Positions 3,259-57,528 are shown, counted from the first letter of the stretch. The stretch is 64,000 nt of DNA from Scyliorhinus canicula (GCF_902713615.1 NC_052153.1:190998826-191062825), one strand, 5' to 3'. A program made the numbers and translations. Notes: generated by a model not told the origin, from the sequence alone.

Positions 3259-3319
3259 AACCATTGTTCCGTTATTTCCATTAAATGATCATCTTTTACC
3301 CTTTTCTTTTTCTCTTGTT

Positions 3320-3950: not shown

Positions 3951-4084
3951 CTTCCCTTCATCTTTTGCTCTTGTGATAAATAAACCATTAAAGATTTCAG
4001 AATACACAAATTATTGGGTTAATTCACTTATGTTGGGACTCTGGGGTCAGTGGGACTGGAACTGACCGCGTGCTCACCCAGGGT

Positions 4085-5195: not shown

Positions 5196-5279
5196 ATTTT
5201 CCAGGCCAATCCTCGAGGGTTAGAACCCCTACCTTTGAGCTCAGTTAAGTGTTAAACTGACATCTTTGTGTCTTCACAG

Positions 5280-5669
5280 ATAAGAGTGAGAATCAGTGGA
5301 GCATGGAGACACCAGATGAGGTGACGGGTAGGGAAGGAAAGGCCACTGTTCTCTTCTGCAAGTTCACTCACCCCCACCTACAATATGAAGGCAACATCAC
5401 AGTCATATGGAAGGTGAAAGAAGTAAAATTATTTACTTACACAAATTATCCAGCACCAAACTCAAAGAGTAGTAGGTTTGAGAATCTGATCAACCAGAAT
5501 TTTAAGGAGCGTTTCGCAGCGATGGGAAACCCGAGGAAGAATGATGCTTCAATAATCATCAAAAAGCTGAAGGATAAAGACACAAGAAGAGAATATATTT
5601 GCCGAGTGGAGCTGAACGGGATAGACGGAGCAAAATATCAGTTAGCGCATGGAGCTCTCAAGATGACAG
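5280..5669 (+). CDS. Exon: N-terminal V-set Ig domain, Siglec-15-like, essential Arg present (YICRVEL)
   Basis: Acceptor tcttcacAG, donor G/GTAAGG, 390 nt. [51 protein letters not shown] parallels human Siglec-15 WSMQVPPEV..LPCTFTHPHRHYDGPLTAIW..RFRLLGNPRRNDLSL..YFCRVEF (recalled sequence). Confidence 0.92.
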
Positions 5670-8600
5670 GTAAGGAACAATTCAAACTAGATAGAAGATT
5701 ATAGTAAATTAAATCCAACACAAACACATGTCTTTAAGAGCTCGTTCTTGGGTTCTGGGCAATACTGACATTGATTCGAGGGGAGGCAGTGGAGTAGTGG
5801 TATTGTTGCTGGACCAGTAACCCAGAGACCCAGAGTCATGGTCTGGGGTCCCGGGTTTGAATCCCGTCCTGGCAGATGGCGAAATTCAATAAAGATCTTG
5901 AATTAGAAGTGTAAAGGTAAGCATGAAACCATTGTCGATTGTCGTAAAAACCCATCTGGTTCACCAATGTCCTTTAGGGAAGGAAATCTGCCGTCCTTAC
6001 CCGGTCTGGCCTACATGTGACTCCAGGCCCCACAGCGATGTGGTTGACTCTTAAATGCCCTCAGGGATGGGCAATAAATGCTGGTCCAGCCAGCGACGCC
6101 CACATCCCATGAACAAATTTTAAAAACGAATTGCCCATCCCAGGAAGATTATGGGGCATCTTCTTCCCAAATCGCTGATGGTGCACTGGACCATTGGGAG
6201 TCAACAGTTTTTAGTGTGGAACTGGTTGATCCTTAACTCGGATGGTACAAGGCAAACTAGACGTCTGACAACATTTCTGATTCCACTTATTGCTCATCCC
6301 GAGTGGCCTTGTGAAAGTGGCGATTGAACCGGATGGCTCACATTGACACTGTGATTGGGTTGGAGAGTTGGGAGATGTACACATCATGAAGAAATCTAAA
6401 ACTGATTAAATATTGACTCCTGGTCTCTCCTTCACTGATTGGCTGTAAGAGGTTTCACGTGATGGCAGAGAATGGTTACCTAAAGGTGAAGGTTGGAAAT
6501 TAAGGGCGTCATCTAACCGAATTGTCGCAGAGTCCTGTGTCGAACGCGTTTATCCGGGGGTTTCCTGGAGTTCGCAGTGCCGAGAAAGACCAGGCTCTCG
6601 AACAGGATTTTGTAGCAATCCAGGGCCTCGGTGGGAATGCGTCTCCAAGGCTGCACTTAGTCCCTTTCCCTGTCACTCAGGTTCTCCCCTCGTCAGAACT
6701 CCTCGGTGCAGGAGGAGACCTCTCGAACCTCTCCCCCGATGCGATTCCCTGACCGCTCTAAACCCCTCACCTACATGGAGATCCTAGAGGCCCCCACCCA
6801 CCCACTCAGCACATCAAATGAGCAGGGCACCCCTGGGCTTGATCCCAGCACCGGAAAAATGTAAACCTGGGCAGGGTGCCACCCTGTCTGGAGAACAACC
6901 CCCTGGAGGCCTCCAATCCCTGGGAGTTGCCCCCCAGGTGCCATTCCGTCTGGACCCCGTTTGTGGGGACCAGTATTGAACGGCGCTCGCCTGAGGTCTC
7001 TGAAGGGAAGGGGTTAAATCCCAGAGACTCGGGGAGATCAGGCAAGTGTAAGATTAGCTGCTCACTCTAATGTACAGATTTGCCAGATTGCAAAGACTCA
7101 TGAGATCCCGTTTGACCTCGCGAGGCATGGCGAGCGGGGTAAATCACGGAAGAGGGATATTCCGGCATCTACCGGCCACACCGCAGCCTTGTTTGCCCGA
7201 GCAGAGGCGCGTCCGGTATATCACACCCTAAGAAATAGAACAACTAAGGTGGAAGATCACCATCTGAGTAGCTTTCGTGAAGAATGTTTGGAAGCGAGTG
7301 TTAAATTGTCAGAGTCTGAATATTCGCTGATTGTATCAGAGTCTGAACATTGTAACCAGTGGATGAAGTGGAAATGTAGACACGGGTTACACACTTCCCA
7401 AGGATAAAACACGGTGTAAACTTGGTATTGTCACTTCTAAACAAAAGGACAATTCGGAGGAAAGTGTTTTGTGAGCTGGATGTCAGATACTGATGAGGGT
7501 TTGGAACTTCTATTAAGTTTCCTGCTTGAAATTTAGCAGGGTGCCTGCGGGACACGGTCCGAGTCTGATGGATTTGGATGGGCGACGGGCGTTCCATGGG
7601 GGAATATATCATGGACTTTAACAGACTGTGTAGAAGATTGAAGAAACTCAATTTGGAGATTCCTTGCTCTGTGCTCACATTTAAATTGCTGGAGTTTGCG
7701 GCGCTGTTGCATACGGACAGACAACTGCTCTTCCAATGGGGTTCAGTACTCGGAAAGAGACTCCCTTTTGACATAGACATAGAATTTACAGCGCGGAAGG
7801 AGGCCATTCGGCCCATCGAGTCAGCAGCAGCCCTTGGAAAGAGAATGCTACCTAAGTCCACCCCTCCACCCCATCCCCGTAACCCAATAACTCCACCAAA
7901 CCATGTTGGACATTCAGGGCAATTTAACATGGCTATTCCACCTAACCTGCACATCTTTGGACTGTGGAGGAAACCGGAGCACCCGGAGGAAACCCACGCA
8001 CACACGGGGAGAACGTGCAGACTCTGCACAGACAGTGACCCAAGTGGGAATCAAACCTGGGACCCTGGCGCTGTGAAGCCACAAGTTCTACGTTCTATGT
8101 TCTATGGTTTTATTTAACTGTACAGTGTTCAACAATGATCGCACCTCGAAAGTATACAAAGAACAAAGAATATTACAACACAGAAATGGGCATTTGGCCT
8201 TCCAAGCCTGTACTGGCCATGATACCCCCCCTTTGCCAAAACCCTCAGCACTTCCTTGTGCCGTGTCCCTCTATATCCATCCTATCCATGTGTTTGTCAA
8301 GATGTCTTTTGAACGCTGTTAATGCATCTGTTTCCACAACCTCCCCTGGCAATGCGTTCCAGGCACTCACCACCCTCCGGGAAAAAACCTGACTCCCACA
8401 TCTCCTCTAAACTTTACCCCACGGACCTTAACCAATGCCCCCTGGTGACTGACCCCTCCAACCTGGGAAATAATGTCTGCCCATCCATTCTATCCATGCC
8501 CCTCATAATCTTGTAGACCTCGATCAGGTCACCCCTCAACCTCTTCTGTTCTAGTGAAAACAGTCCGAATCTATTCAGCCTCTCTGCATAGCTAACGCCC

Positions 8601-11600
8601 TCCAGACCAGGCACCATCCTAGTAAGCCTCCTCTGCACCCTCTCCAAAGCTTCCACATCCTTCTGGTAGTGTGGAGACCAGAATTGTGTGCGATATTCCA
8701 AGTGCGGCTTTACCAAGGTTCTATACAACCAGGGGCTGGTTTAGCTCACAAGGCTAAATCGCTGGCTTTTAAAGCAGACCAAGCAGGCCAGCAGCACGGT
8801 TCAATTCCCGTACCAGCCTCCCCGGACAGGTGCCGGAATGTGGCGACTAGGGGCTTTTCACAGTAACCTCATTGAAGCCTACTCGTGACAATAAGCGATT
8901 TTCATTTCATTTCATTTCATACAACTGTAGCATGACTTGCCAGTTTTAATACTCAATGCTCCGTCCAATGAATGCAGGCATTCTGTATGTTTTCTTGATT
9001 ACCTTGTCCACTTGTGTTGCCATTTTCAAAGATCTGTGGTCCTGCACGCTAAGATCTCTCTGACTTTCTATATTCCTAAGAGTTTTGTCATTTATGGTAT
9101 ATTTTCACTCTATGTTAGACCTACCAAAATACATTACCTCACATTTGTCTGGATTAAACTCCATTTGCCATTTTTCTGCTCAAGTCGCCAACCTATCTAT
9201 GTCCTGCTGTATCCTCTGACAATCCTCAACACTATCTGCCACTCCACCAACCTTGGTGTCATCAGCGAATTTACTAATCAGACCGGCTACATTTTCCTCC
9301 AAATCGTTTATGTATACTACAAACAACAGAGGCCCCAGCACAGATCGCTGTGGAACCCCACTAGCCACAACCTTTCATTCAGAAAAACACCCTTCAACTA
9401 CCACCCTTTGCCTTCTGTGACCTAGCCAGTTCTGTATCCATCTTACCACCTCACGTCTGATCCTGTGTGACTTCACCTTTAGTACCAATCTGCCATGAGG
9501 CACCTTGTCAAAGGCTTTACTGAAGTCCATGTAAACAACATCCACCACCCTCCCCTCATCAATCATCTTTGTTACCTCCTCAAAAACCTCAATCAAGTTA
9601 GTGAGGCACGATCTCCCCTTCACAAAACCATGCTGTCTATCGCTAATGAGTCCATTTGTTTCCAAATGAGTATAAATCCTGTCCCTGAGAATTCTGTCCA
9701 ATAATTCACCTGCAACCGTTGTGAGGCTCACCGGCCTATATTTTCCTGGATTATCCCTGCTACCTTTCTTAAACAGCGGGACCACATTAGCTATTCTCCA
9801 GTCCTCTAGGATCTCACCTGCAGCCAATGAGGATACAAAGATGTCAGAGATGAGAATATTTTTGATTCATTGAGTTGTGATTGGGAATGTGCTGTCTGAA
9901 AGGACAATGGAGCAGATTTAAATCATAACTTTTGTTATTTGGATATCAATTGTGTTTAATTATATGCAAGTGGAGGTTTTACTTTGATCACTTCTAAAGG
10001 AACAAGGCTATTGTGTTAGGAGATATATGATTTTGATTCTGTAGTTCAATACAAAACTAAGTAAATATTGGCTCCAGTATCATCCTTCACTAATAGCTTT
10101 CAAATGGGAAATTACCAGACTGATATTTACATCTTTATTACTCTGCTTGCTGTGAGGGGGTCGAGAGACATTGAGAGTAATGGAAGTATATTGCTGTCCA
10201 GTCTAGGCAGGCTGAGAGTGGAGTTGTCCTGGTCTTATCCAATGGTGCTCTAAAAACCACCTGGCCAACCCATATACATTTCCCCAAGTCACATGTTCCA
10301 TCAGAGTTGGCAGGAAATTCACTCCAATGGAGGAGGAGTTGACCCATCTTATCACAGAGCTCCATCCGTTTAGCACTTTCACCCTTGTGTTTAAATCCCT
10401 CCATGGCCTTTTTTTTATATCTCGTTGTTGTAATCATATCCAGGTCAATTTCCCTCCAAAATCTCAGAACTTTTCCAATCCCAACTTATGCCTTTCTCAC
10501 TTCCTAAAGGCAACTATTGACTTCCCTGTGTTTATATAAATGTCAGTTGGTGTTGTTTGCCTTTGGTGTTCTAATTAAAATAATCTTTATTATTCCCACA
10601 AGTAGACTGTTCGGGTACACAGAGGGAGAAGTCAGAATGTCCAATTTGTTTAGCTGCTGTTGTATAAAGAATCAAAAGTTCTACTCCTTCTCACAAACTC
10701 CTTTAATTTCCTTTAACACAACTCTGTACAAAAACTCTATCATCACAACTCTATACAAAAACTCTATCATCACAACTCTGTACAAAAACTCTATCATCAC
10801 AACTCTGTACAAAAACTCTATCATCACATCACATGCCCCAAAGGCCACCTGAAGCTTCTTTACATATCAGTGTCAATGACTGGATACTTAACATAAATGA
10901 GACATTTAATTGGAATGTCTCTTAACCCATTCCTTAACAGTCTCCCCTTCCTTAAAGAAAAAAAATAATTTGGTGGAAATAAAATTACAAGAAATTCAAA
11001 AACACACGCTATTTCCCTTGTTTTGTTTTTGGAAGGAAAAAAAAAACAAAGTCACAGAAACAGGCGCCCTTCATTCACAATATCCAAAAGTTTCTGTGAA
11101 CTAGCCTCTCTTTTTGTCAAACAGTCTGACAATTGATAGCTACTGTCGACCCAATTAATTTTTGCTATCTCCCCTCTGTCCAACATCTGCTTCAAACTTG
11201 CGATGTCTATCCGTAACCTTTTCTCACTGACACTTTTTGTAGAGTGCACATTTTCCCACAGGGATTTATTGTCAATGTGACAGTCAATAGATATATTACC
11301 CAAATCCCCTAATCCCAAAAGGTCTGTCAATATCTGACTTATATAAAATGCCGTATCCACCGCCTCGACAAGACTTAACGCCTCAACAGCCAAAGTGCTT
11401 TTGACCACTCTCCTTATTTTCTTTGTTTCCCACACAAGAGGGTAACATTTACCATTGTTCCCCAAAAGGAAAATTATAAAACCTCCTGCGCTTGAAGCCC
11501 CATCACGTAAATTTGCATAGGACGCATCATTATAAACTATGAGTTTGATTTGCCTACGGTCACCTAAAACCGGGAACCTCAAAACACACTCCTGCATTTT

Positions 11601-14600
11601 TAGTTTGGCCAACACTTTATTTGCTCTTGTTATGTCTTCCACTTTGGGATTATTCATTTTTGTACTCAACTCTAAGACATCAAAACTCACGTCCGGTCTA
11701 GTCTGTCTTCCTAACCAATTCAGTTGCCCAATTAAACTTCTCAGTTGCTCTTTTTCCATCTTTGAAACCACTGCATCTTTTTGTGAAACCCGGCCACGAC
11801 TAATTGCTATTGGGCTGATGCTTTCCAAATGAGATTGCTGACGTAAAGTTGCCCCTAATTTAGTCTGTCCGATTTCCAGTCCAATATATTTAAATGCACC
11901 GGAAGCCTGACTTCCAATCCTGAATTCTTTCCTCAAACCAGAGATTACTATAGCTTCAAAATCACTAATCCCACCCCACAAAAAATCATCGGTGTGCATC
12001 ATACAGACGCCAGAAAGATTTCCTTTATAGTGCCAGTAAAACATTGCCGGATCTGCTTTAAACTAGCAACAGTCTAACTTTAACAAAACAGACCTAACCG
12101 AAAAATACCAGACTCCAGATGCATCATTTAATCCATATACACATTTGTTCAACTTCCACAGTAACCCTTCTGTGTTAGCTGCTTCTTTAGGAGAAAAATG
12201 TCTCTCTGGAGCTGATGCCCCTGCAAAAAGGCAGCTTTCATATCTATAGATTTGCATTCCCATGCCTTTGTGGCTAATAGAGCCAAGAAGATCTTTAAAA
12301 TAACCTTTCCTGCTATAGGTGAATCTATCCTTAAATCCTGATCTTCTAAGTTTTCTTCAAATCTCCTTGCCACAAGCCTGGCCTTTGCCTTATAAGTTCC
12401 ATCTGGAAGAACCTTTTCCGTGCAAATCCATCTGTGGGATAGAGCTCTTTGTCCCCTATTCGGTACTTCTGTGTATACCCCAAATTCACTCCAACTATGC
12501 AGGTCTTGCCGTTTGGCATCTTTGATAACTTTTTCATCTAATTTATTGGAAGCCACAAAAATCTCACGTGTATGTGGGCTTCTACTACAAGTAGTATTTA
12601 TAGTCTTACCCATGTTCCGAGACCTTGATAAACTACGTCCACTATGGTATCTCGTTCTGTACTGTTACTGCTTGATCTTTCCCTACTGCTGTGTGTCATG
12701 AGAATGTCACTTTAAGAAATGTTTGGCTGCTCATGTTACTGCAGTGATGTCAGAGTGTGGCTGGAGCTGAGCTCTGGCTCTGCTTTTTAGTTTCACTTTG
12801 AGAAAAGCTTGGGTGTGTCTGTTTGTTGTGGTTTTGTTTCAGTGTTGGAGCTGCGGTCAGCCACAGAAGGTGTAATGCTATTCTCTCTGCCATGTAAAGA
12901 CTATCTCTTGATCATTTGGGGAATTCAGAGGGATAACTGTTCTCAGCAGTGAATTTAAACCGGATTTGCTTCTGTTAAAAGTTTTTTTTAAAGTCTTATG
13001 GATGTAAAAATGAAAGTAAGGATTACTAAGTGTTGTATTCTTTGGGGGATGTATTTGAATTGATGGTTGCTAAGATGTTCACTGTATGTTTTAAAAAGGT
13101 TAACTTGAGTTCATAGAATAAACATTGTTTTGCTTTACAAATTACTGTTAGATGTCTGCTGCACCACACCTGTAGAGTGGGCCGTGTGCTCCCCATACCA
13201 CAATCAATTAAAAGTTGTGGGTCAAGTGAACTCCATGATACACTTTGGAGTTCTCGAAACCCTGGCCCATAACAAATTGGGGGCTCGAGGGGGATAGAAG
13301 TCTATCTATTGGATTGGCTTAGTGAACTTAAAGACAGTGAGGGGTGAGCATATAGTGGTTGCTTTTCAGGTGTGGTATTCCAGTTTAAGTGGGGAGTGTG
13401 TTGTGGACAATGGCTCTTTCAGAGGCTCTGAGGTTTTTGGGGGTGGAGACGGTCACACGCAGTAACTTACAGACAGAGACTAAAAGCAGACTGTTAGATT
13501 TGGCAAAAACATTGCAGTTAACATTACTTGACAAAATGCAAAAAGATGAAGTAATTGTGGCATTGGCTAAGCATTTAAAGTTCCCTGAGATATAGTTTGA
13601 CTCATTGGAAATGGAAAAAATTCAGTTACAAATTAAACAAATGGAAAATGAGAAAGAATTAAAGCAGCTTGAATACAAAAGGGAGAGAGAGGAAAAAGAA
13701 AGAGAGAAAGAGTTTGAACTTCGGAAAATGGCCATGAAACATGACAGTCAGTTAAAATTGGCAGATTTAAAGGGAAATGTACAGTTTGAGGAGAGTGATG
13801 AGGATAGTGAGAAAGAGCGTCAAAGTCGAAGGCTTGGTGGGGATCTATTTAAATATGTCCAAGCATTGCCAAGATTTGACGAGAAGGAGATAGAAGCCTT
13901 TTTCATTTCATTTGAGAAGGTAGCTAAACAAATGAAATGGCCACAGAACATGTGGGTATTGCTGATTCAAACAAAGCTGGTAGGTAGGGCTAATGAAGTG
14001 TTTGCATCACTACCGGAGGAGGTATCTGGGACGTGTGAGGAGGTGAAAAATCCATCTTAGGTGCACATGTACTAGTGCCTGAAGCCTACAGACAAAGGTT
14101 TAGAAATTTAAGGAAAGAATTTGGTCAAACATACATGGAGTTTGAAAGGCTCAGAGTAATTTTGATCGGTGGATAAGGGCTTTGAAAATAGACCAAACGT
14201 ATGAAGCTCTCAGAGAAATTATACTTTTGGAGGAGTTTAAAAATTCAATTCCTGATGTAGTGAGAACTCATGTGGAAGAACAGAGGGTTAAAACTGCAAG
14301 ATTAGCAGCAGAAATGGCAGATGATTATGAATTAGTTCATAAATCGAAGCTTGGTTTCCGACATCAGTTTCAGCCTGTGAGGGATAGAAACTGGGGACAT
14401 GAGAAATACCCAACTGGGAGAGGCAAAGGTGATCTGATGGGAGATAATAAGGAGAGTGTATCTCAGATTAAAAAAGAAATCCAGGAGGGTGGAAAAGAAA
14501 TGAAAAGTTTCAAATGTTTTTACTGTAATGAACTAGGTCATGTAAAGTCACAGTGTTGGTGGTTGAAGAAAAGCACTGGGAAGGCAGATGTGGTAAAACA

Positions 14601-50600: not shown

Positions 50601-53600
50601 GGCGACTGGCACGCCGTGATTCCCGCCCCCGCCGAATCACCGGTGCCGGAGAATTCGGTGGGCCAGCGGGGGCGGGATTCAGCCCCCCCCCCTCCCCCAG
50701 CGATTCTCCGACCTGGCGGGAGGGGTCAGAGAATCCCGCCCATGTTTTCCAGATGTGTAACATCTGTCTGGGCGACAGCTGTTCCCTGGGATTGGGCAGC
50801 CCTCCAACCATCTTCTCCCTGGCGAGTCCCTGCCTCCATTTGATGTGCTGCAGCACGTGTGCGGTGCTCACCAGAGGGTGAGCCAGGAGCCTGATCACTA
50901 ACATTACCCACCGAGGTGATAGTGTCTGTGATGGTGAAGGTAGTGCCGAGGATACGGTGTCTTTCCTGGAATCATGCGCCGGGGTGTCTTTAGGCTACGG
51001 CTGGGGGCCAGTGACCCTGGACAGCCTAGCCTTGCCTGATGGTGATCCTGTAAGACAAAAGACATGTGGCGAGATCTTGGGAAGGACACGTCTGTGGGTG
51101 AGCGGTAACTCACTTGCTGCAAGGGCATCCGCGTTGCACTGGACTCTCACTTGTTTGACGCATGTCGAACTCCATTCCAGATACTGTCCTCTCCCCAGCC
51201 AACCCCCCCCCCCAGGTTGCAGGGTTCTTTCCTCAGAAGGAGCATGGACCCGAATATCTGGGATTCCCCGTTCCGTGTTTTGGCGCCCCATTGCGATTAT
51301 GGGCTGCCTTATCCTCGGGGACACAGAAAGGATATAGTGAGATACTGGGACGTGGGTTTTATGGGGGGCGGCTTGTAGCTGGTGGCATGTGTGTGCAAGG
51401 GTCCTGGCCAAAGAGAATGATACATGTGCTGAGGATTCGTGGAGGGTGGGCTGTGAGGGAGATGCAAGCAGGTGGGGTGTTATTGACCTTGAGGGGATTG
51501 GGGTCAGATGTGACGAGTGAGGAATGGGAGAGATGCCAAGGGCACAGAGACTGTTAATGAGCCATGCTGCTTGAAGGTACTTGAGAAGATGCCGCATGGC
51601 AGACTGGTACAAAAGGTGACGTCACACGGGATCAGAGGTGAGATAATAAGGTGAATACAGAACTGACGAGGTCATAGAAAACAAAAGTAGCAGTAGAGGG
51701 TGTTTTCCTGAATGGAAGGTTGTGACTAGTGGTGTTCCACAGGGATCGGTGCTGGGGCCTCTGTTGTTTGTGGTGTACATAAACAATTTGGAGGAAAATG
51801 TAGCTGGTCTGATTAGTAAGTTCACGGATTACACCAAGGTTGGTGAAGTGGGAGATAGTGTTGAGGGTTGTCAGAGGATACAGGAGGACAGAGATAGGTT
51901 GGAGACATGGGCAGAGAAATGGCAAATGGAGTTTAATCCGGGCAAATGTGAGGTTATGCGTTTTGGTAGGGCTAACAGAGAGGGGAAATATACCGTAAAT
52001 GGCAAAACCGTTAGGAATATAGAAAGTCAGAGAGATCTGGGCGTGCAGGTCCACAGATCTTTGAAAGTGGCAACATAAGTGGACAAGGTAGTCAAGAAAG
52101 CAGACGGAATGCCTGCATTCATTGGACAGGGCATCGAGTATAAAAACTGACAAGTCATACTCCAGTTGTATAGGACCTTGGTAAGGTCGCACTCCAAATA
52201 TTGCGCACAATTCTGGTCACCACATTACCAGAAGGGTGTGGAGGCTTTGGAGAGGGTGCAGAGGAGGTTTACCAGGATGTTGCCTGGTCTGGAGGGTGTT
52301 AGCTATGTGGAGAGGCTGAATAGACTCGGACTGCTTTCATTAGAACGACAGAGGTTCAGAGGGGACCTGATAGAGGTCCAGAAGATTATGAGGGGCATGG
52401 ATAGAGTGGATGGGCAGGCAGTCTTTCCCAGGGTGGAGGGGCCCATCACCAGGGGGCATAGGTTTAAGGTCCATGGGGCAGAGTTTAGAGGAGATGTGTG
52501 AGGCAGGTTTTTTACACAGAGGGTGGTGAGTGCCTGGAACGCTTTGCCAGGGGAGGCTGTGGAAGCAGGTATGTCAACGGCGTTCAAAAGGCATCTCAAC
52601 AAACACATGGATAGGATGGGTACAGAGAGATATGGCACAAGGAAGTGCTGAGAGTTTTGGCCAAGGGTGGTATCATGACTGGTACAGGCTTGGAGGGCCG
52701 AATGGCCTGTTCCTGTGCTGTATTGTTCTTTGTTCTTTAAAGTCATGCATCTTCTCATGGGATTGGGTGCCATCCTATGGTGAGGCTCTCCACCATCATG
52801 GCCTTTGCCACCTCATCCCAGGCGTCGTTCAGTATCGCAGCCATGAGTCTCCATCCCACCCTGGCGAAGAGTGTGACCCTCCAGCCAGGAAGCACGCTGA
52901 TGTTATTTGTGAAGGTATCCCAACTTGCAACACCGATTCTTGGGGCTGTTTAGTTTTGTTTTGTTTTGATGGGAGGAGACAAGTGAAACCCAGAGAGAAT
53001 AAACAGCCCAGTCATCATGTCACAATTATGAAAGACTATTTATTAAGTAAAGACAAATATGCACAAAAGGGACGACTCCAGCCTCACCCAATTAAGATGT
53101 CTTGGTTTTTGAGATGTTGGCGTCGCTGGCTGGGCCTGCAGTTATTGCCCATCCCTGAGGACATTTAAGAGTCAACCTCATTGCTGTGGGTCTGGAGTCA
53201 CATGTAGGCCAGACCAGGTAAGGACGGCAAATTTCCTTCCCGAAAGGACATTAGTGAACCAGATAAGTTTTTACGACATTTGACAATAGTTTCATAATCA
53301 GCATTAGATTTTTAATTCCAGATTTTTTATTGAATTGGTGGGATTCAAACCCGGGGTCCCCAGAGCATTACCCGGGCCTCTGGATTATTAGTCCAGCGAC
53401 AGTACCACAAATCCAGTGCCTCCCCTTAAAATGTATGAGTTACTAAACGCACACAGTTTATATAGAACGTACCCCTTGCTACACAATATATCTACAGTAC
53501 CTGAACTCTGTAAGACCTCCCCTGTTCCCCAGCAACATCCAAATGGAATAACCACCTATAGTTACCACACAATACAGGGATGGTACTCAAATGTGTGAAC

Positions 53601-56600
53601 CGCCTTATTCCTGGTCCAGCAAAGATATTTTAAAACTGCTGTTACGAAGGTTTTCTGCACTGCCTCGGCTCCATGACTTAGAAGCCTGTTTGTTGTAAAC
53701 TTGTCCATGATGGCTGGAAACTGGCCTATCAATTTTTTGAGACTGCTAGATGGTAACTGCCTCCCTCCCCTCAGGAACTGGTCAAGTACACCTTTGTTGT
53801 TCATAAAATCATAGAATTTACAGTGCAGAAGGAGGCCATTCAGCCCATCGAGCCTGCACCGGCTCTTGGAAAGAGCACCCTACCCAAGGTCAACAACTCC
53901 ACCCTATCCCCATAACCCAGTAACCCCACCCAACACTAAAGGCAATTTTGGACACTAAGGGCAATTTATCATGGCCAATCCACCTAACCTGCACATCTTT
54001 GGACTGTGGGAGGAAACCGGAGCACCCGGAGGAAACCCACGCACACACGGGGAGGATGTGCAGACTCCACACAGACAGTGACCCAAGCCGGAATCGAACC
54101 TGGGACCCTGGAGCTGTGAAGCGATTGTGCTATCCACAATGCTACCATGCTGCCCCTTGTTCTTTGATTGTTCTGTGTAATTGGTTGTCTGCATCTATCA
54201 ACTTCCTTGACTACACATCAACATGTACATATTTGAGGGATCTTCCCAATCGTCTACAATCTGTTTCTCCTCCATAATCTATTCACGCTTGATTATCTAA
54301 ACTGCCGTTCTAAACTCGTTGCTGGGACTAACGCAGTGTTATGGGCCAGGGTTTAGAGAACACCAAAGTGTATCATGGAGTTCACCTGACCCAAACTTTA
54401 AATAGATTTAGTTATGGGGAGCACAAGGGCCCACTTTACAGGTGTGATGCAACAAAGAACTAAGAGTATTTTAAAACGAAAACAATGTTTATTCTATGAA
54501 ATCCAGTTAACATTTTTATAAACACACAGTAAACATCTCAGCAACTATCAACTCAACTACTCCCCCCAAAGAATACAGTACTCTATAAGTAACCCTTAAT
54601 CTTTCCTAACAACATCCATAAGACCCTCTTTAACACAGAGATCAGATTTAAATTCTCTACTGAGAGCAGTTATCACTTTTAAATTAGCAAGTGATCTGCA
54701 GATATTCCTTTCATGCAGATAGAAATCAGAATTACACCTGGTTTTGTTGGATGCAGCTCCCAATCTGCAAAATGAAACTAAACATACCCTGTAGCTGCTA
54801 GCTCAAAGCGAAAGTAAAACAGACAGACAGCCCAGCTCCACCTACACTCTGACATCACTGCAGCTATTTGATAAACACCCATTTCTTAAAGGTACATCCA
54901 CTGCAGCTATTTGATAAACACCCATTTCTTAAAGGTACATCCACTACAGCTATTTGATAAACACCCATTTCTAAAAGGTAAGCCCACTGCAGCTATTTGA
55001 TAAACACACTTAAAGGTGCTCTCACATGACAGCAGACCAGTTGAGGAAATTTGAATACTGTCCATTGCTGTCTTCAGGTAGATTCATGACATTCCTCTCC
55101 TCAACACCATCCAGCATACGTTCAATGTTAGCATCCAGGTACCTTGGTTCTGTTCTTTCAGTGGCTGTCACCTTGGCTGGAATGACAGTCAGTGCTGAGT
55201 GGAGCCTTTAAAAGCTGCTCCAGCTTGTCAGGCTCCGAACACAAATCCCCACCCCAGTGAATCAGATGCCAGCGTGCATTTACATGACCTGCATTTCTCC
55301 TGGCCGGCGCAGTTCCCTCGATTCTCCACCGGCGGCAGCACTTAGTCTCCAGGACGGAGAATCCAGGCCATTGTTTTAAAATCTGCCGGATTGTTTTGAA
55401 TAGCCAGCAGGAGATTGATGGCGGACCCGGTAGACTCCCGCTCCTTTCGAGAGGGTTAACAAAATCTTATCTACCAGGGCTATGGGGCTAGGTGGATAAG
55501 TGGAGCTGAGGCCACAATCAGAGCAGCCATGTTCTTATTGAATGGGGCAGCAGACCAAGGGGCAGAATGGCCTACTCCTGCTCCTAATTCTTGTGTCCTT
55601 ATCTGTCCTAATATCTCTTTTCTTGGCTCAGAAATTGTGTTTGTTTCTCTCTCCTGTGAAGTACCTTGAGATATTGCACAATGGTATAGGCTCTGGGTAA
55701 ATGCGTTGTTGGGCTAATTGCTTTGCGATTCAATTGTAGAAAGGTTTTTCAGGTAAGGATGAAAAGGGGGAAGTAACTGACCATATTCTGCCCAAATAAC
55801 TGATGCCTGCTCACACGTCTTCTGATCTTATATCCTTTCCAGGGCCGCAGGAGTCTCTGTACAGCAACGTTAATATTCGAAAGGAAGAGACAGGTAAGGA
55901 ATAGCAACGGAAAGATGGCAGCTAACTCAGATTCCTACTGTAACTAACTACGGGGCAACTAACTACCTAACTGTGAGTGACACGGTGACATAGTAGTTAT
56001 CAGTCCTGCATCACAGCGCCAGGGACCCGGGATCGACTCCAACCGCGGGACACTGTCTGTGCGGAGTCTGCACGTTCTCCCCGTGTCTGTGTGGGTTTCC
56101 TCCGGGTGCTCCGGTTTCCTCCCACAGTCCAAAGATGTGCAGGTGAGGTGGATTGCCCATGCTAAATTGCGCCTTAGTGTCCAAAAAGGTCAGGTGGGGT
56201 TACGGGTAGAGGGAGGAGTGTGGGTGCTCTTTTGGAGGATTGGTGCAGAATCGATGGGGCTGAATGGCCTCTTCCTGTCCTGTACTCTTCCTGGTTCTCT
56301 AATGGGCAAGATAGAGTGTGTGTCTTTTTAAATACTGACTGTTAAAAGGGCAGATTATTATTGAATTCAAATTTCACCGTCTGCAGTGGCAAGATTTGAA
56401 CCTGGGACCCCAGAGTATTATTCTAGGTCTCTGGTTTACTAGCCCAGTGACAATACCACTAAGCCACCGCCTCCCCATCTGAACTAAACAGAGAAAATGC
56501 TGGAAAAAATCTCTGCCGGTCTGGCAGCAAAATTAAAAACTAGCTGTCTCGCCTGTCTCTGAATGGGAGAAGAGATTGAAGAAGAATGTTGACAAAGGGA

Positions 56601-56986
56601 GAGATTCAACAGCTCCTTCTTAGTGCGTTCCTGTCCTATCAGTCCCAGCTTCCCACTTTCCACACTTTGTCCAGCAATAACTTAGAGCCAACAACAAACA
56701 ATTATCCAACAACTTGAATTGTGGTTTCCGTCAGCATTATATCAATTTAAGAACAGTTTGATGGCAATGGTTGGGCGACAGCGATCCTAACTTATAGTTA
56801 CAGTCAAGGCCACAGACAAGACATTCCAACTTGACACATTTAAGAATTGATATGATTCTGAAAGATTTCCTCTTTGTTGCTCTGCAATCAAGCTGCAGAA
56901 TCTCAAACAACCCGGTGCAAAAATTCCCTGACACTGAATTTTCTTTTTCAGCTGTAATCTACGCGACTGTCGCCAAATCTACCTAA
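5280..56986 (+). CDS. Siglec-15-like type I membrane receptor, V-V-C2-TM with three ITIMs; join(5280..5669,19525..19890,39321..39689,43961..44032,49800..49868,55843..55893,56952..56986); leader exon not identified
   Basis: All seven exons have AG/GT boundaries and phase 1, and concatenate without a stop until TAA 56984-56986 (about 450 aa). Domain order Ig-V, Ig-V, Ig-C2, TM, ITIM tail is coherent. Confidence 0.85.
5783..6125 (+). mobile_element. tRNA-headed SINE, second family (core GGGAAGGAAATCTGCCGTCCTTACC)
   Basis: A-box/B-box-like head. Near-identical core at 37740-38050 (+) and 53080-53420 (-). Confidence 0.75.
7200..7745 (+). mobile_element. Degenerate Ty1/Copia-type gag fragment
   Basis: [34 protein letters not shown] resembles the Copia gag capsid segment; frameshifted upstream. 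Confidence 0.6.
7780..8080 (-). mobile_element. HE1-like SINE
   Basis: Full SINE body plus CR1-derived tail in reverse. Confidence 0.85.
8090..9835 (-). mobile_element. 5'-truncated CR1 LINE (RT region to 3' end) with a SINE inserted at 8732-8920
   Basis: Minus ORFs with [33 protein letters not shown]. Confidence 0.92.
8732..8920 (+). mobile_element. Short tRNA-derived SINE with (TTTCA)n tail
   Basis: GGGGCTGGTTTAGCTCA head, GGTTCAATTCC B-box, ATACAAC-like TSD. Other copies at 38405-38590 (-) and 57553-57735 (+). Confidence 0.85.
10718..10825. repeat. 27-bp tandem repeat x4 (ACAACTCTGTACAAAAACTCTATCATC)
   Basis: Copies start at 10718, 10745, 10772, 10799. Confidence 0.95.
11052..12693 (-). 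mobile_element. Ty1/Copia pol remnant (RT and RNase H), cut by the Gypsy insertion at 12694
   Basis: [41 protein letters not shown] (YVDD position), YNDASYA, DNKSL, SDCLTK; several frameshifts. Confidence 0.9.
15062..15410 (-). mobile_element. HE1-like SINE inserted in the Gypsy pol
   Basis: Interrupts PTVVD(K)PVENQ between protease and integrase. Confidence 0.9.
18880..19225 (+). mobile_element. Rex1/Babar-type LINE 3' end inserted in the Gypsy 3' LTR
   Basis: Matches the reverse of 31301-31700; ends AATAAACAAATCCAAT(CCAAT)n. Confidence 0.85.
19525..19890 (+). CDS. Exon: second V-set Ig domain (YFCHVHI, no essential Arg)
   Basis: Acceptor tttccctatctcAG, donor G/GTAAGA, 366 nt, phase 1-1. 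[39 protein letters not shown] is a textbook V-set. Confidence 0.9.
20190..20790 (-). mobile_element. Cluster of three nested HE1-like SINE pieces inside the 5' LTR
   Basis: SINE bodies in reverse; AACAGTC flanks the cluster on both sides. Confidence 0.8.
21480..25972 (+). mobile_element. Near full-length CR1 LINE
   Basis: 5' UTR, ORF1, ORF2 (APE endonuclease plus RT) broken by single stops at 23543-23545 and 24146-24148, 3' end TTCTTATGTTCTTAT. Confidence 0.95.
21899..22819 (+). pseudogene. CR1 ORF1: zinc-finger (CSSC..CKKC), coiled coil, SGNH/GDSL esterase domain
   Basis: [24 protein letters not shown] esterase blocks; the probable ATG upstream reads ATAGCA near 21879. Confidence 0.85.
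22844..25974 (+). pseudogene. CR1 ORF2 (APE endonuclease-reverse transcriptase), two premature stops
   Basis: [46 protein letters not shown] in one frame across three ORF pieces. Confidence 0.92.
25995..26225 (+). mobile_element. HE1-like SINE
   Basis: Head CACAGTGGCGCAGTGGGTTAGC, B-box GGTTCGATCC. Confidence 0.8.
26230..30470 (+). mobile_element. 5'-truncated CR1 split by an opposite-strand CR1 (pieces 26230-26665 and 29640-30470)
   Basis: RT frame [18 protein letters not shown]... stops near 26665 and resumes at GAGATGGCAGATGGAG near 29645. Confidence 0.85.
26666..29640 (-). mobile_element. CR1 LINE ORF2 (endonuclease plus RT, one internal stop)
   Basis: Minus ORFs 27924-29693 and 26751-27914: [23 protein letters not shown]; tail (CATAGAA)n at 26665. 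Confidence 0.95.
31301..34910 (-). mobile_element. Rex1/Babar-type LINE, defective
   Basis: [65 protein letters not shown]; (TTGGA)n tail at 31301. Confidence 0.88.
35358..35525 (+). repeat. 45-bp coding-type tandem repeat x3 ([15 protein letters not shown]) in the LTR element internal region
   Basis: TCAGATCATCCAGGAGGGACTGATGTCACAATGCTCAACGATGCA repeated. Confidence 0.9.
35625..35945 (-). mobile_element. HE1-like SINE
   Basis: Full body in reverse with CATAGAA tail. Confidence 0.85.
37040..37330 (-). mobile_element. HE1-like SINE
   Basis: SINE body in reverse. Confidence 0.8.
38791..38992. mobile_element. Penelope-derived fold-back element with a 76-bp inverted repeat, inserted in a SINE tail
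   Basis: Arms 38824-38899 and 38917-38992 are reverse complements with 2 mismatches; flanked by GTCATAAGTA / GTCACAAGTA. Confidence 0.8.
38877..38911 (-). ncRNA. Minimal type I hammerhead ribozyme motif
   Basis: Minus strand reads CAC-CUGAGGA-A-GGAGC-AGU-GCUCC-GAAA-GC-UC-GUG: core CUGANGA and GAAA, 5-bp stem II, NUH triplet CUC, 3-bp stem I. Confidence 0.65.
39321..39689 (+). CDS. Exon: C2-set Ig domain plus transmembrane helix (no charged residue)
   Basis: Acceptor after a long pyrimidine tract (alternative AG at 39313-39314 is also in frame), donor [36 protein letters not shown] parallels Siglec-15 C2; [26 protein letters not shown] followed by KR. Confidence 0.92.
41165..41790 (-). mobile_element. 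Two HE1-like SINEs
   Basis: Reverse SINE bodies 41165-41460 and 41530-41790. Confidence 0.82.
41988..42275 (+). mobile_element. HE1-like SINE
   Basis: Forward SINE body with CR1-type tail. Confidence 0.8.
42785..43255 (-). mobile_element. CR1 3' fragment, same subfamily as 21480-25972
   Basis: Near-exact reverse complement of about 25520-25972. Confidence 0.9.
43961..44032 (+). CDS. Cytoplasmic exon 1 ([24 protein letters not shown])
   Basis: Acceptor tctttgatAG (same as the 49800 exon), donor G/GTATTA, 72 nt, phase 1-1, non-repeat sequence. Confidence 0.7.
44060..45900 (-). mobile_element. Penelope-like element remnant (GIY-YIG C-terminus and 3' region), interrupted by a CR1 piece (44215-44660) and a MITE
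   Basis: Minus translation IPVPYHFN...QHKLE / [11 protein letters not shown] at 45620-45890; degenerate hammerhead near 44177-44209. Confidence 0.7.
44932..45613. mobile_element. Harbinger-type MITE
   Basis: TIR GGGCGAAATTCTCC ... GGAGAATGCCGCCC; 3-bp TSD CTG (44929-44931 and 45614-45616). Confidence 0.8.
46630..46930 (-). mobile_element. HE1-like SINE (alternative tail)
   Basis: Reverse body plus GGGCTTTTCACAGTAACTTCATTG-type tail. Confidence 0.82.
47240..47655 (-). mobile_element. HE1-like SINE(s)
   Basis: Reverse SINE body, with a piece of a second tail in the opposite orientation. Confidence 0.75.
47899..47964 (+). CDS. Candidate extra cytoplasmic exon ([22 protein letters not shown]), paralogous to 43961-44032
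   Basis: ttttccAG acceptor in phase 1; [10 protein letters not shown] vs [10 protein letters not shown] (21/30 nt identical by eye); donor A/GTAATT is weak. Confidence 0.3.
48305..49475 (+). mobile_element. Degenerate 5'-truncated CR1
   Basis: [37 protein letters not shown]. Confidence 0.88.
49800..49868 (+). CDS. Cytoplasmic exon 2 with ITIM VVYTAV
   Basis: Acceptor tctttgatAG, donor G/GTAATG, 69 nt, phase 1-1: [23 protein letters not shown]. Confidence 0.85.
50338..50741. mobile_element. Harbinger-type MITE containing a 52-bp hairpin
   Basis: TIR GGGCGGGATTCTC ... GAGAATCCCGCCC, 3-bp TSD ATG; inner arms 50460-50511 and 50539-50590. Confidence 0.82.
51595..52735 (+). mobile_element. 5'-truncated CR1
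   Basis: [30 protein letters not shown], 3' UTR ending GTTCTTTGTTCTTT. Confidence 0.92.
53805..54155 (-). mobile_element. HE1-like SINE
   Basis: Complete reverse body and tail. Confidence 0.88.
54337..55031 (-). mobile_element. Solo LTR of the Gmr1-type Gypsy family, with internal ~41-bp tandem repeats
   Basis: Termini are the reverse complement of 12694-13274 (TGTTATGGGCCAGGG...CATGACA); 4-bp TSD GCAG; CACTGCAGCTATTTGATAAACACCC repeated about 4 times. Confidence 0.9.
55843..55893 (+). CDS. Cytoplasmic exon 3 with ITIM SLYSNV
   Basis: Acceptor tatcctttccAG, donor G/GTAAGG, 51 nt, phase 1-1: [17 protein letters not shown]. Confidence 0.88.
55985..56300 (+). mobile_element. HE1-like SINE
   Basis: Forward SINE body. 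Confidence 0.8.
56952..56986 (+). CDS. Terminal coding exon with ITIM VIYATV and stop
   Basis: Acceptor ttttctttttcAG; reads [11 protein letters not shown] then TAA in phase 1. Confidence 0.85.
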
Positions 56987-57241: not shown

Positions 57242-57528
57242 TGATGAGCCATCAATTGCACGAGAGACGAGTTGCTATACAAAAGTTAGGCTTTAATAAG
57301 CTAGAACTTAGCCCTGCGGTTGACTACAATAAAATGGACGACCGCCGGGCGTTCCGACTATTTATACCTCAGTATGGAGGCGTGGTTAACTCAGCCCCTC
57401 GACCAATCGGAGAGCTGTCACATGACTGGTCTCAACCAATCGGTCGAGAGGCACATGACCGACCAGGGCCAATGGTAAGCCGGTGTTCTGCACCAATGGC
57501 AGACAGCTATGCAAATCATATCACCACA
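57242..57528 (-). mobile_element. Solo LTR (287 bp), antisense to the gene
   Basis: TG...CA termini, 5-bp TSD GTAAC; minus-strand TATAAA (57361-57366) and ATTAAA (57291-57296); several CCAAT boxes; octamer ATGCAAAT 57509-57516. Confidence 0.88.

What the first reader, a model, noticed from the sequence alone, without database searches (positions are those of the whole stretch)
5280..56986. An inhibitory-type Siglec-15 relative: V-V-C2-TM with three ITIMs and no TM lysine
Seen: seven in-frame exons. The first domain matches Siglec-15-specific motifs (FTHP, GNPRxND, canonical B-F cysteine pair followed directly by Arg in YICRVEL), and the C2 plus TM exon also parallels Siglec-15. Established: mammalian Siglec-15 is V-C2, has a TM lysine that recruits DAP12, and lacks canonical ITIMs. 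Here the TM is uncharged, the tail has VVYTAV, SLYSNV and VIYATV, and there is an extra V domain. Inference: a cartilaginous-fish inhibitory member of a paired Siglec-15-type receptor family, which bears on whether the ancestral Siglec-15 was inhibitory.
Basis: partly seen in the sequence, partly recalled or inferred. Interest (0 to 1): 0.85.

Follow-up and report, generated by a model that had tools for sequence, protein, structure and literature searches.

The report
Catshark inhibitory Siglec-15-like receptor gene
This is a real catshark gene for a cell-surface immune receptor whose outer tip closely resembles human Siglec-15 but whose tail carries three "off-switch" motifs. Related fish carry a matching "on-switch" partner, so the single activating Siglec-15 of mammals seems to descend from a larger paired receptor family.

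Summary
Seven + strand exons, all phase 1/1 with good splice sites, encode V1-V2-C2/TM and a 77-residue tail with VVYTAV, SLYSNV and VIYATV. The transmembrane segment is uncharged. The leader exon lies outside the window.

V1 is Siglec-15-type by sequence (human Siglec-15 7zoz E 2.7e-20; next is CD33 at 1.7e-4). It is also Siglec-15-type by fold (AF2 pLDDT 92.8; TM 0.82/0.85 to 7zoz; next about 0.65). The F-strand Arg, W44 and Y154 equivalents are kept; the C95-C104 disulfide is absent. V2 is a divergent V domain with His in place of Arg.

The window is Scyliorhinus canicula. Its NCBI model ("Siglec-15", 256 aa) holds only V2-C2-TM and reads into intron 3, so V1 and the ITIM tail are unannotated. 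Predicted orthologues in Heptranchias, Narcine, Rhinoraja, Leucoraja and Callorhinchus show the full architecture.

About 400-aa partners with a TM lysine and almost no tail exist in most elasmobranchs. Their V2 and C2 are sisters of the same species' inhibitory gene (76-99% identity). Their V1 forms one old clade that has mostly lost the Arg.

The scan noted similar genes elsewhere in this genome. I found no paper describing the family. It is a new variant of a known kind. Ligand and signalling are inferred.

The parts
5280..5669 (+). Exon V1: N-terminal Siglec-15-type V-set domain. It holds the B-F cysteine pair, the F-strand Arg codon CGA at 5603-5605 (in YICRVEL), a Trp at 5297-5299 and the G-strand KYQ at 5633-5641.
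   Evidence: Phase 1/1 with AG|..|GTAAGG. Pfam V-set E 4e-7. Human Siglec-15 7zoz_A E 2.7e-20 with Arg aligned to R143. AF2 pLDDT 92.8; Foldseek best match 7zoz_A, TM 0.82/0.85. Coordinates.
19525..19890 (+). Exon V2: second, divergent V-set domain with His in place of the Arg (YFCHVHI; CHV at 19821-19829). The exon begins AG|GTAAGA.
   Evidence: Phase 1/1. Pfam V-set E 3.4e-16. Best PDB match is Siglec-15 at E 1.8e-12, then TIM-3. It is 100% identical to S. canicula P0194 and 88% to S. torazame P0153. V2 domains form their own starred clade.
39315..39689 (+). Exon C2 + transmembrane segment. The TM lies at about 39611-39682 ([24 protein letters not shown]), has no charged residue, and is followed by KR.
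   Evidence: Phase 1/1 with donor GAG|GTGAGC. Pfam Ig/I-set/Ig_3. PDB matches are generic Ig; Siglec-15 reaches only E 0.028. It is 100% identical to P0194. TM coordinates.
43961..44032 (+). Tail exon a: [24 protein letters not shown]. It is an ITIM-like module with His where the Tyr would be.
   Evidence: Phase 1/1. 65% identical to the first tail module of Heptranchias P0003/P0138 (VPVHSV). It shares a 43-nt, 79%-identical stretch with the acceptor region of the next tail exon.
49800..49868 (+). Tail exon b: carries ITIM 1, VVYTAV (49823-49840).
   Evidence: Phase 1/1. Motif found. Equivalent modules (P/V)VYS(V/I)V occur in Heterodontus, Heptranchias, Rhinoraja and Leucoraja.
55843..55893 (+). 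Tail exon c: carries ITIM 2, SLYSNV (55854-55871), which is also a YxN motif.
   Evidence: Phase 1/1. An identical SLYSNV is present in the Narcine P0152 and Rhinoraja P0147 tails.
56952..56986 (+). Last coding exon: ITIM 3, VIYATV (56954-56971), then AKST and stop TAA (56984-56986).
   Evidence: Acceptor TTTTCAG| in phase 1. The C-terminal (A/V/E)IYA(T/A)V is conserved in Heptranchias, Heterodontus, Narcine, Rhinoraja and Mobula; Callorhinchus P0196 has the variant DVIYAVV.
57328..57333 (+). Candidate polyadenylation signal AATAAA, 342 nt after the stop codon.
   Evidence: Pattern match only; not otherwise tested.

Best explanation
The locus encodes a type I membrane receptor of the small-spotted catshark (Scyliorhinus canicula). 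It is the ITIM-bearing (inhibitory) member of a cartilaginous-fish family related to Siglec-15.

Shown: the seven-exon reading frame; the Siglec-15-type V1 with the F-strand Arg and two of the aromatic contact residues; a second divergent V domain; a C2 domain; a neutral TM; three canonical ITIMs; and orthologues and Lys-TM partners in other species.

Inferred mechanism: V1 binds a sialylated ligand through the Arg salt bridge, and V2 and C2 act as a stalk. Lacking a TM lysine, the receptor does not pair with DAP12. After Src-family phosphorylation the three ITIMs (Tyr spacing 19 and 14 residues) recruit SHP-1/SHP-2 and damp ITAM signalling. The middle motif (YSNV) could also bind Grb2.

The gene evolves together with a Lys-TM, nearly tail-less partner. 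That partner's V2-C2 is kept similar by gene conversion, while its V1 is an old separate lineage that has mostly lost the Arg.
For: Exon structure, phases and splice sites.

V1 is Siglec-15-type: phmmer against PDB gives 7zoz_A at E 2.7e-20 versus CD33 at 1.7e-4. The AF2 model has pLDDT 92.8. Foldseek gives 7zoz_A at E 1.2e-11, TM 0.82/0.85, rmsd 2.4 A, versus about 1e-6 and TM about 0.65 for sialoadhesin, CD33 and MPZ.

Binding-site residues defined for human Siglec-15 in PMC10264397: C64-C142, R143, W44 and Y154 have equivalents in V1.

Neutral TM and tail.

Orthologous full-length models with the same modules: Heptranchias P0003; Narcine, Rhinoraja, Leucoraja, Mobula and Heterodontus; Callorhinchus P0196.

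Partners with TM ..LIPLIKFLLLL.. and a 5-10-residue tail in elasmobranchs, 21-51 residues in the two Callorhinchus forms.

Same-species INH/ACT sisterhood for V2 and C2, with the AU test rejecting an ACT clade (p 3e-9 and 8e-6). ACT V1 forms one starred clade (96/97). Pair identities are V1 44-54%, V2 61-95% and C2 65-99% (V2 76-95%, C2 74-99% in same-species pairs).

Arg is kept in 6 of 7 INH V1 domains and replaced by Leu in 9 of 10 elasmobranch ACT V1 domains.
Against: There is no transcript evidence here. The only S. canicula protein model for the locus (P0194) starts inside V2 and ends by reading through the exon-3 donor, so it includes neither V1 nor the ITIM exons. The leader exon is outside the window.

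The C95-C104 disulfide of human Siglec-15 is absent, and Y87 has no aligned aromatic residue. PMC7226832 relays that cloned zebrafish Siglec-15 bound tested glycans poorly, so an Arg is no guarantee of lectin activity.

The partner with a TM lysine was seen in S. torazame and other species, not in this genome. SHP and DAP12 coupling are inferred from motifs only.
Confidence: 0.7

Rival explanations
1. Only the short product annotated by NCBI is made (V2-C2-TM ending in intron 3). On this reading V1 and the four tail exons are decaying relics of an older gene or belong to no mature mRNA.
For: P0194, the S. canicula 'Siglec-15' model of 256 aa, matches the window's V2 and C2-TM at 100% and continues ..[21 protein letters not shown], the read-through of the 39689 donor. 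No S. canicula protein with V1 or the tail turned up in three database searches.
Against: All five extra exons are open, in phase and have consensus splice sites. V1 keeps every invariant family position and folds with confidence. The tail modules, including SLYSNV and the C-terminal IYATV, are conserved in batoids and other sharks, and Callorhinchus keeps a C-terminal DVIYAVV. That is hard to reconcile with relics. The P0194 model begins at an internal Met without a signal peptide, so it is itself incomplete.
Confidence: 0.1
2. The receptor is inhibitory as described, but V1 does not recognise sialic acid. It would bind a protein or another glycan ligand, the Arg being a structural leftover.
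For: The C'-C'' disulfide (C95-C104) that shapes the extended face of human Siglec-15 is missing, and the Y87 equivalent is not aromatic. Zebrafish Siglec-15 reportedly bound glycans weakly. The activating partners dispense with Arg and the G-strand aromatic altogether.
Against: Arg, the N-terminal Trp and the G-strand K(Y/F)(Q/E) are kept together in most of the inhibitory lineage (sharks, most batoids) and in canonical Siglec-15 from lungfish to mammals. Rhinoraja and Mobula depart from this. Such retention suggests selection on the canonical pocket.
Confidence: 0.2
3. V1 and V2 are used alternatively rather than in tandem, giving V1-C2 or V2-C2 isoforms. All exons are phase 1, and V2 starts with AG|GTAAGA, which regenerates a donor after V1 is joined.
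For: Uniform phase 1 allows any exon to be skipped. Heptranchias isoforms differ in the number of V2 copies (P0003 versus P0138).
Against: Predicted proteins of more than 15 cartilaginous-fish species carry V1 and V2 in tandem. This reading adds isoforms but does not replace the V-V form.
Confidence: 0.15

Closest known systems
Siglec-15 of mammals, birds and bony fishes (human structure 7ZOZ; PMC10264397, PMC7226832)
   Same: The V1 domain is the closest sequence and fold match. It shares the B-F disulfide followed directly by the essential Arg, the WSM, FTHP and GNPRxND motifs, the Trp and G-strand Tyr contacts, and a C2 domain before the TM. The tail motif QESLYSNV resembles the canonical Q(E/D)S.YEN(L/V/F).
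   Different: There are two V domains, no C95-C104 disulfide, no TM lysine (so no DAP12 pairing is expected) and three canonical ITIMs. The trees do not resolve orthology.
Predicted orthologues in other cartilaginous fishes, e.g. [quoted passage not shown]
   Same: The same V1(Arg)-V2(His)-C2-neutral TM architecture and a modular DPQ..Y..V tail ending in IYA(T/A)V (IYAVV in Callorhinchus). V1 is 59% identical to P0003.
   Different: These are automatic models with inconsistent names (Siglec-12, Siglec-15, CXADR-like, CD276 homolog, uncharacterized). The number of tail modules and V2 copies varies. None has been studied experimentally, as far as I could find.
Primate paired Siglecs (Siglec-5/14, Siglec-11/16; PMC4042635, PMC5701461)
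   Same: An ITIM receptor and a charged-TM partner have ectodomain parts kept alike by gene conversion.
   Different: By the abstracts, in primates the pairs share their ligand-binding domains (Siglec-5/14) or extracellular region (Siglec-11/16). Here the membrane-proximal V2 and C2 are homogenised. The N-terminal V1 is divergent (44-54%) and the activating V1 has mostly lost the Arg.
Teleost siglec15l (e.g. Conger conger XP_061119044.1, P0045) and salamander 'Siglec-12' models (P0014, P0015)
   Same: A Siglec-15-type V domain with Arg and ITIMs in the tail; P0045 also has a neutral TM.
   Different: The teleost form has one V domain. The salamander models have two Arg-bearing V domains and no C2. 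They are different subfamilies in the V-domain tree.

Membership tests
Siglec family | N-terminal V-set Ig domain | tested here: met
   Pfam V-set E 4e-7. AF2 model pLDDT 92.8. The top PDB folds are Siglec-15, sialoadhesin, CD33 and Siglec-7.
Siglec family | Conserved Arg on strand F that salt-bridges the sialic acid carboxylate | tested here: met
   The Arg of YICRVEL (codon 5603-5605) aligns with human R143. The role of R143 is from PMC10264397.
Siglec family | Sialic-acid-dependent ligand binding | not testable with these tools
   This needs a recombinant ectodomain, sialidase treatment and an Arg mutant.
Siglec-15 (orthologue group) | V domain nearest to Siglec-15 among known proteins, with the C64-C142 B-F disulfide | tested here: met
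   E 2.7e-20 versus 1.7e-4 for the next family. TM 0.82/0.85 versus about 0.65. Both Cys are invariant in A2.
Siglec-15 (orthologue group) | C95-C104 disulfide of the C'-C'' region | tested here: not met
   V1 has no Cys besides the B and F cysteines. The region reads ..[19 protein letters not shown]... The feature is described in PMC10264397.
Siglec-15 (orthologue group) | One V and one C2 domain | tested here: not met
   There are two V exons before the C2 exon.
Siglec-15 (orthologue group) | Lysine in the transmembrane segment (DAP12/DAP10 coupling) | tested here: not met
   The [26 protein letters not shown] has no charged residue. The requirement is stated in PMC7226832.
Siglec-15 (orthologue group) | Orthology by phylogeny or synteny | tested here: inconclusive
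   In the 95-row V-domain tree the cartilaginous-fish V1 clade and the canonical Siglec-15 cluster sit on an unresolved fork. Synteny cannot be read from the window.
ITIM-bearing inhibitory immunoreceptors | Cytoplasmic (S/I/V/L)xYxx(I/V/L) motifs behind an uncharged TM | tested here: met
   VVYTAV, SLYSNV and VIYATV lie in a 77-residue tail. The consensus is as quoted in PMC7226832.
ITIM-bearing inhibitory immunoreceptors | Phosphotyrosine-dependent recruitment of SHP-1/SHP-2 or SHIP | not testable with these tools
   This is a biochemical test.
Paired activating/inhibitory receptors | A partner gene with a closely similar ectodomain but a charged TM and no ITIM | tested here: inconclusive
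   Met in other species: S. torazame P0153 (V2 88% identical to the window, TM ..LIPLVKFLLLL.., tail 5 aa), and the Heterodontus P0141/P0148, Heptranchias P0195/P0003, Pristis P0146/P0143 and Callorhinchus P0007/P0196 pairs. The partner was not seen in S. canicula itself. Earlier scan notes are untested leads only.

The most novel reading that the evidence does not exclude
Siglec-15 is the lone mammalian survivor of an ancient multigene family of paired receptors. In elasmobranchs the inhibitory member keeps the canonical sialic-acid pocket. The DAP12-type partner has an old, separate V1 that lost the Arg and the G-strand aromatic. The stalk (V2-C2) is repeatedly homogenised between the two genes, which is the reverse of the mosaic seen in primate Siglec pairs. 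The canonical Siglec-15 tail motif (Q-E/D-S-x-Y-E-N-L/V/F) would then be a remnant of the same ITIM/YxN module as SLYSNV here.
Probability: 0.35. Interest if true: 0.75.

Novelty: new variant of a known kind. Interest (0 to 1): 0.62.

Why it matters
Siglec-15 is treated in the literature as a single, conserved, DAP12-coupled activating receptor "from fish to mammals" (PMC7226832), and it is a cancer-immunotherapy target.

This locus and its relatives show that cartilaginous fishes carry Siglec-15-type V domains on ITIM receptors, paired with Lys-TM partners. The unusual division of labour (Arg kept on the inhibitory side, stalk homogenised) could be tested directly. The finding also corrects a truncated public gene model, because the S. 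canicula "Siglec-15" of 256 aa lacks its ligand-binding domain and its whole signalling tail. Finally, it gives a concrete set of sequences for asking when the inhibitory and activating branches of this lineage separated.

Tried and rejected
- **NKp30, CD300 or another non-Siglec origin of V1.** Rejected. Neither family appears in the PDB sequence list up to E 10 or in the top 50 folds.
- **A leader exon in 1-5279.** None found.
- **Further Ig exons or further tail modules in the window.** None found.
- **The C2/TM exon as specifically Siglec-15-like.** Not supported. Contactin, NCAM and others score better, and Siglec-15 reaches only E 0.028.
- **One alignment of P0003 with all window exons (A1).** MAFFT placed V2 on V1, so A1 was not used as a search profile.
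- **DNA of the S. torazame and Heptranchias loci**, wanted for exon-level and dN/dS comparison. Not obtainable: the file was too large, or the product was not on record.
- **Orthology to canonical Siglec-15 from the 95-row V tree.** Unresolved.
- **AU tests on V1** (inhibitory V1 as a clade, p 0.30; sharks as a clade, p 0.11). Neither is rejected, so only the starred activating-V1 clade is claimed.
- **Literature searches** for an inhibitory or two-V Siglec-15 relative in sharks or teleosts. Nothing found.
- **Rfam at gathering thresholds.** No RNA family anywhere in the window.
- **The full spliced protein** was never submitted to a search, because it has no reference and would have had to be typed.
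Full report
**1. Observation**

Reading the DNA at each boundary gives seven exons:
- 5280-5669 (V1)
- 19525-19890 (V2)
- 39315-39689 (C2 plus TM)
- 43961-44032
- 49800-49868
- 55843-55893
- 56952-56986 (stop TAA at 56984-56986)

Every exon follows a pyrimidine tract and AG. Every non-terminal exon is followed by a good GT donor, and every exon is phase 1/1. Joined, they give 451 codons. A regular-expression scan of all six frames finds only these three Ig domains in the window. A scan for further phase-1 exons with ITIM or "PQ" starts between 39690 and 57100 finds only the four tail exons. No Met-hydrophobic-GT leader exon exists in 1-5279, so the 5' end of the gene is outside the window.

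The introns are full of mobile elements:
- An LTR-type element with integrase and RT at about 13.6-18.5 kb.
- A LINE with endonuclease and RT at about 21.9-26 kb.
- A retroviral-type integrase at 63.3-64 kb.

**2. The domains**

V1 is a V-set domain (Pfam E 4e-7). Its best match among all solved structures is human Siglec-15 (7zoz_A, E 2.7e-20). The next matches are CD33 (1.7e-4) and sialoadhesin (1.4e-3). An AlphaFold2 model built on a 34-row family alignment (A2) has mean pLDDT 92.8. Foldseek again puts 7zoz_A first (E 1.2e-11, TM 0.82/0.85, rmsd 2.4 A, 37% identity). Sialoadhesin, CD33, MPZ and Siglec-7 follow at about 1e-6 and TM about 0.65. NKp30 and CD300 do not appear.

V2 is a stronger Pfam V-set match (E 3.4e-16). 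It also hits Siglec-15 best (E 1.8e-12), followed by TIM-3 and CD276. It has His where the Arg would be (YFCHVHI).

The C2/TM exon is a generic Ig domain. Contactin-2, NCAM2 and DSCAM score best, and Siglec-15 reaches only E 0.028.

**3. The binding site**

PMC10264397 defines the following for human Siglec-15:
- the C64-C142 B-F disulfide
- R143 on strand F
- a C95-C104 disulfide in the C'-C'' region
- contacts from W44, Y87, V150, R153, Y154 and E155

Using the alignments, V1 keeps both B-F cysteines. It keeps the Arg directly after the F cysteine (codon 5603-5605), the Trp (5297-5299) and the G-strand Tyr (in KYQ, 5633-5641). It lacks the C95-C104 pair, and a Lys aligns with Y87 in a loop that aligns poorly. 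The pocket is thus largely, but not wholly, conserved.

**4. Whose gene it is and what is annotated**

[quoted passage not shown] P0194 is 100% identical to the window's V2, starting from an internal Met, and to the C2/TM exon. It then continues ..[21 protein letters not shown], which is the read-through of the 39689 donor up to the stop at 39745. The window is therefore S. canicula. The public model contains neither V1 nor any ITIM exon, and it has no signal peptide.

**5. Support for the full model from other species**

A HMMER search of 1.84 billion representatives with V1 gave 127 hits. The named ones are cartilaginous-fish, lungfish, amphibian, ray-finned-fish, bird and turtle proteins, mostly called Siglec-15, Siglec-12 or uncharacterized.

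Heptranchias perlo XP_067838218.1 (P0003, 536 aa) has exactly this architecture. It has a leader, V1 with CRV (59% identical), V2 with CHV, C2, a neutral TM, and a tail built of modules. The modules carry ..VPVHSV....VPVYSI....ILYSSV....TLYSTV.. and a C-terminal AIYAAV. The His-containing first module matches the window's exon 4 at 65% identity.

Equivalent long forms exist in these species:
- Narcine (P0152: IIYSTI, VIYSTV, SLYSNV, EIYATV)
- Rhinoraja (P0147)
- Leucoraja (P0139)
- Mobula (P0002)
- Heterodontus (P0148, partial)
- Callorhinchus (P0196)

ITIMs 2 and 3 of the window thus recur with the same or nearly the same sequence. ITIM 1 has looser equivalents, (P/V)VYS(V/I)V. These lineages separated hundreds of millions of years ago.

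**6. The paired family**

The same searches returned about 400-aa proteins in most elasmobranchs: Cetorhinus, Heterodontus, Mustelus, Chiloscyllium, Rhincodon, S. torazame, Heptranchias, Pristis, Leucoraja, Rhinoraja, Hypanus and Mobula. They have V1-V2-C2, a TM reading ..M(L/F)CL(I/L)PL(I/V)KFLLLL(I/V)TGIILF with a lysine, and a cytoplasmic tail of only 5-10 residues. Callorhinchus has two Lys-TM forms with tails of 21 and 51 residues.

Careful IQ-TREE trees per domain show a mosaic.
- **V2 and C2.** The inhibitory and activating proteins of one species are starred sisters: Heptranchias, Heterodontus, Scyliorhinus (window with S. torazame P0153) and Callorhinchus for V2; Heptranchias, Heterodontus and Pristis for C2. 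The AU test rejects a single activating clade (p 2.9e-9 for V2 and 7.8e-6 for C2).
- **V1.** All elasmobranch activating sequences form one starred clade (96/97) that spans sharks and rays. The inhibitory V1 domains lie outside it as an unresolved grade.
- **Pairwise identities of the pairs**. Elasmobranch V1 is 44-54% identical. V2 is 76-95% and C2 74-99% in same-species pairs; the cross-species Scyliorhinus and Mobula pairs fall lower (V2 88% and 61%, C2 65% and 66%). The Callorhinchus pair is 86-93% throughout.
- **Heterodontus.** The two proteins are nearly identical across C2 (99%), up to ..CQIHFS, and diverge completely from there into the TM. In the window C2 and TM share one exon.
- **F-strand Arg**. 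It is kept in 6 of 7 inhibitory V1 domains (Mobula has Gln). It is Leu in 9 of 10 elasmobranch activating V1 domains (Mustelus keeps Arg).
- **G-strand motif**. The K(Y/F)(Q/E) motif is kept in most inhibitory V1 domains (not in Rhinoraja or Mobula) and lost in the activating ones.

I read this as repeated gene conversion of the stalk between two old lineages that are defined by V1 and by TM/tail. That is an inference from trees of predicted proteins.

**7. Wider family**

In a 95-row V-domain tree (quick method), all V2 domains form their own starred clade. That clade includes the V2 domains of a second cartilaginous-fish subfamily. This subfamily has V-V-TM without C2; P0034, P0037 and P0057 carry ITIMs and P0055 carries a TM Lys. 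V2 is therefore an old, separate domain type and not a recent copy of V1.

The V1 clade of this family, the V1 domains of the second subfamily, a lamprey/caecilian outgroup cluster and a cluster holding canonical Siglec-15 all meet at an unresolved fork. The canonical cluster includes mammal-like P0026, bird P0024, frog P0032, coelacanth P0064 and lungfish P0006. It also includes teleost siglec15l and the single-V cartilaginous-fish "Siglec-15" (P0046, S. canicula P0205). The gene is therefore in the Siglec-15 family by similarity, but orthology is not shown.

ITIM-bearing relatives also exist outside cartilaginous fishes: Conger siglec15l P0045 and salamander P0014/P0015.

The single-V shark proteins have a neutral TM. 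In S. torazame the single-V gene (scyTo_0015103) and the activating V-V gene (scyTo_0015104) are listed with the same longest-contig length (141,275 bp) and carry consecutive locus tags. This suggests a cluster.

**8. The tail**

After the TM the tail reads [77 protein letters not shown]. Three motifs fit (S/I/V/L)xYxx(I/V/L), with Tyr-Tyr spacings of 19 and 14 residues. SLYSNV is also YxN.

Its context, QESLYSNV, resembles the canonical Siglec-15 tail: lungfish QESTYENV, bird DSTYENF, mammal-like ESNYENL. That canonical motif formally also fits the loose ITIM consensus. The resemblance is short and is offered only as a lead.

Exons 4 and 5 are old duplicates, sharing a 43-nt, 79%-identical stretch at the acceptor. 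The His variant is conserved in Heptranchias, and I cannot explain it.

**9. Mechanism and confidence**

- **Shown:** the gene structure, the domain identities, the motifs, and the family relationships among predicted proteins.
- **Inferred:** Arg-dependent sialoglycan binding by V1. No DAP12 pairing. ITIM phosphorylation and SHP-1/2 recruitment. Opposition to a Lys-TM partner.

My estimates are:
- 0.85 that the seven exons form one functional coding unit.
- 0.75 that the product signals through its ITIMs.
- 0.55-0.6 that V1 binds sialic acid.

**10. Novelty**

I found no paper that describes an ITIM-bearing or two-V Siglec-15 relative, or paired Siglec-15-type receptors. PMC7226832 states that Siglec-15 is activating and that its TM lysine is conserved from fish to mammals.

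Orthologues are nevertheless already in public protein sets as automatic predictions under assorted names. The class is not hidden; it is uncharacterised, and at this locus it is mis-modelled.

Earlier notes of this scan report similar genes elsewhere in this genome. s1-268223 describes a V-V receptor with a neutral TM and ITIM-like motifs 1.26 Mb downstream. s1-270756 describes a single-V receptor with a TM lysine 240 kb downstream. I could not test either.

Noticed in passing
window 19552-39745 (+): [quoted passage not shown] It ends by reading through the exon-3 donor (39689) to a stop at 39745. It therefore lacks a signal peptide, V1 and the whole ITIM tail.
   Followed up: yes
window 19523-19530: The V2 exon begins AG|GTAAGA. 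Joining V1 (..ACAG) to it regenerates a consensus donor, a recursive-splice-like arrangement that could allow V2 skipping. I confirmed only the sequence.
   Followed up: partly
window 43961-44032: The first tail exon is an ITIM-like module with His in place of Tyr (IPVHSA). The same His variant is kept in Heptranchias (VPVHSV) beside Tyr-bearing copies, and Pristis has DPIHNVV. Its conservation is unexplained.
   Followed up: partly
other species: P0140, P0141, P0144, P0145, P0146, P0149, P0150, P0151, P0009: The Lys-TM (activating-type) partners have Leu instead of the sialic-acid-binding Arg in V1 (..C-L-V..). They have also lost the G-strand aromatic. Mustelus P0142 keeps Arg.
   Followed up: yes
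other species: P0034, P0037, P0057, P0049 versus P0055: A second cartilaginous-fish subfamily has V-V-TM with no C2 domain. It also comes in ITIM (CTYA.., V(T/I)YAAV) and Lys-TM versions.
   Followed up: partly
other species: P0046, P0205 (S. canicula), P0209 (S. torazame): Single-V 'Siglec-15' proteins of sharks and rays have the Arg but a neutral TM and no clear ITIM. In S. torazame the gene (scyTo_0015103) is listed with the same longest-contig length (141,275 bp) as the activating V-V gene (scyTo_0015104), with consecutive locus tags.
   Followed up: partly
window 13596-18475, 21875-25971, 62471-64000: Mobile elements fill the introns and the 3' flank. They are an LTR-type element (SCAN-like gag, integrase, RT), a LINE (endonuclease plus RT, with a 613-aa open stretch) and a retroviral-type integrase at the window's end.
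   Followed up: partly
window, at least 10 copies (e.g. 7988, 15285, 35818, 37234, 41343, 41666, 54031): A SINE-like repeat translates as ..[17 protein letters not shown].. and produces chance 'GNPR' matches unrelated to the receptor.
   Followed up: no
Rfam at gathering thresholds reports no family anywhere in the window. I did not run the more permissive search.
   Followed up: partly
window 1641-2326: A tandem repeat whose translation reads YRIY(P/T)EYNTEYILNIIQNI.. over several copies, in an AT-rich stretch (GC 0.34 in 1-4000).
   Followed up: no
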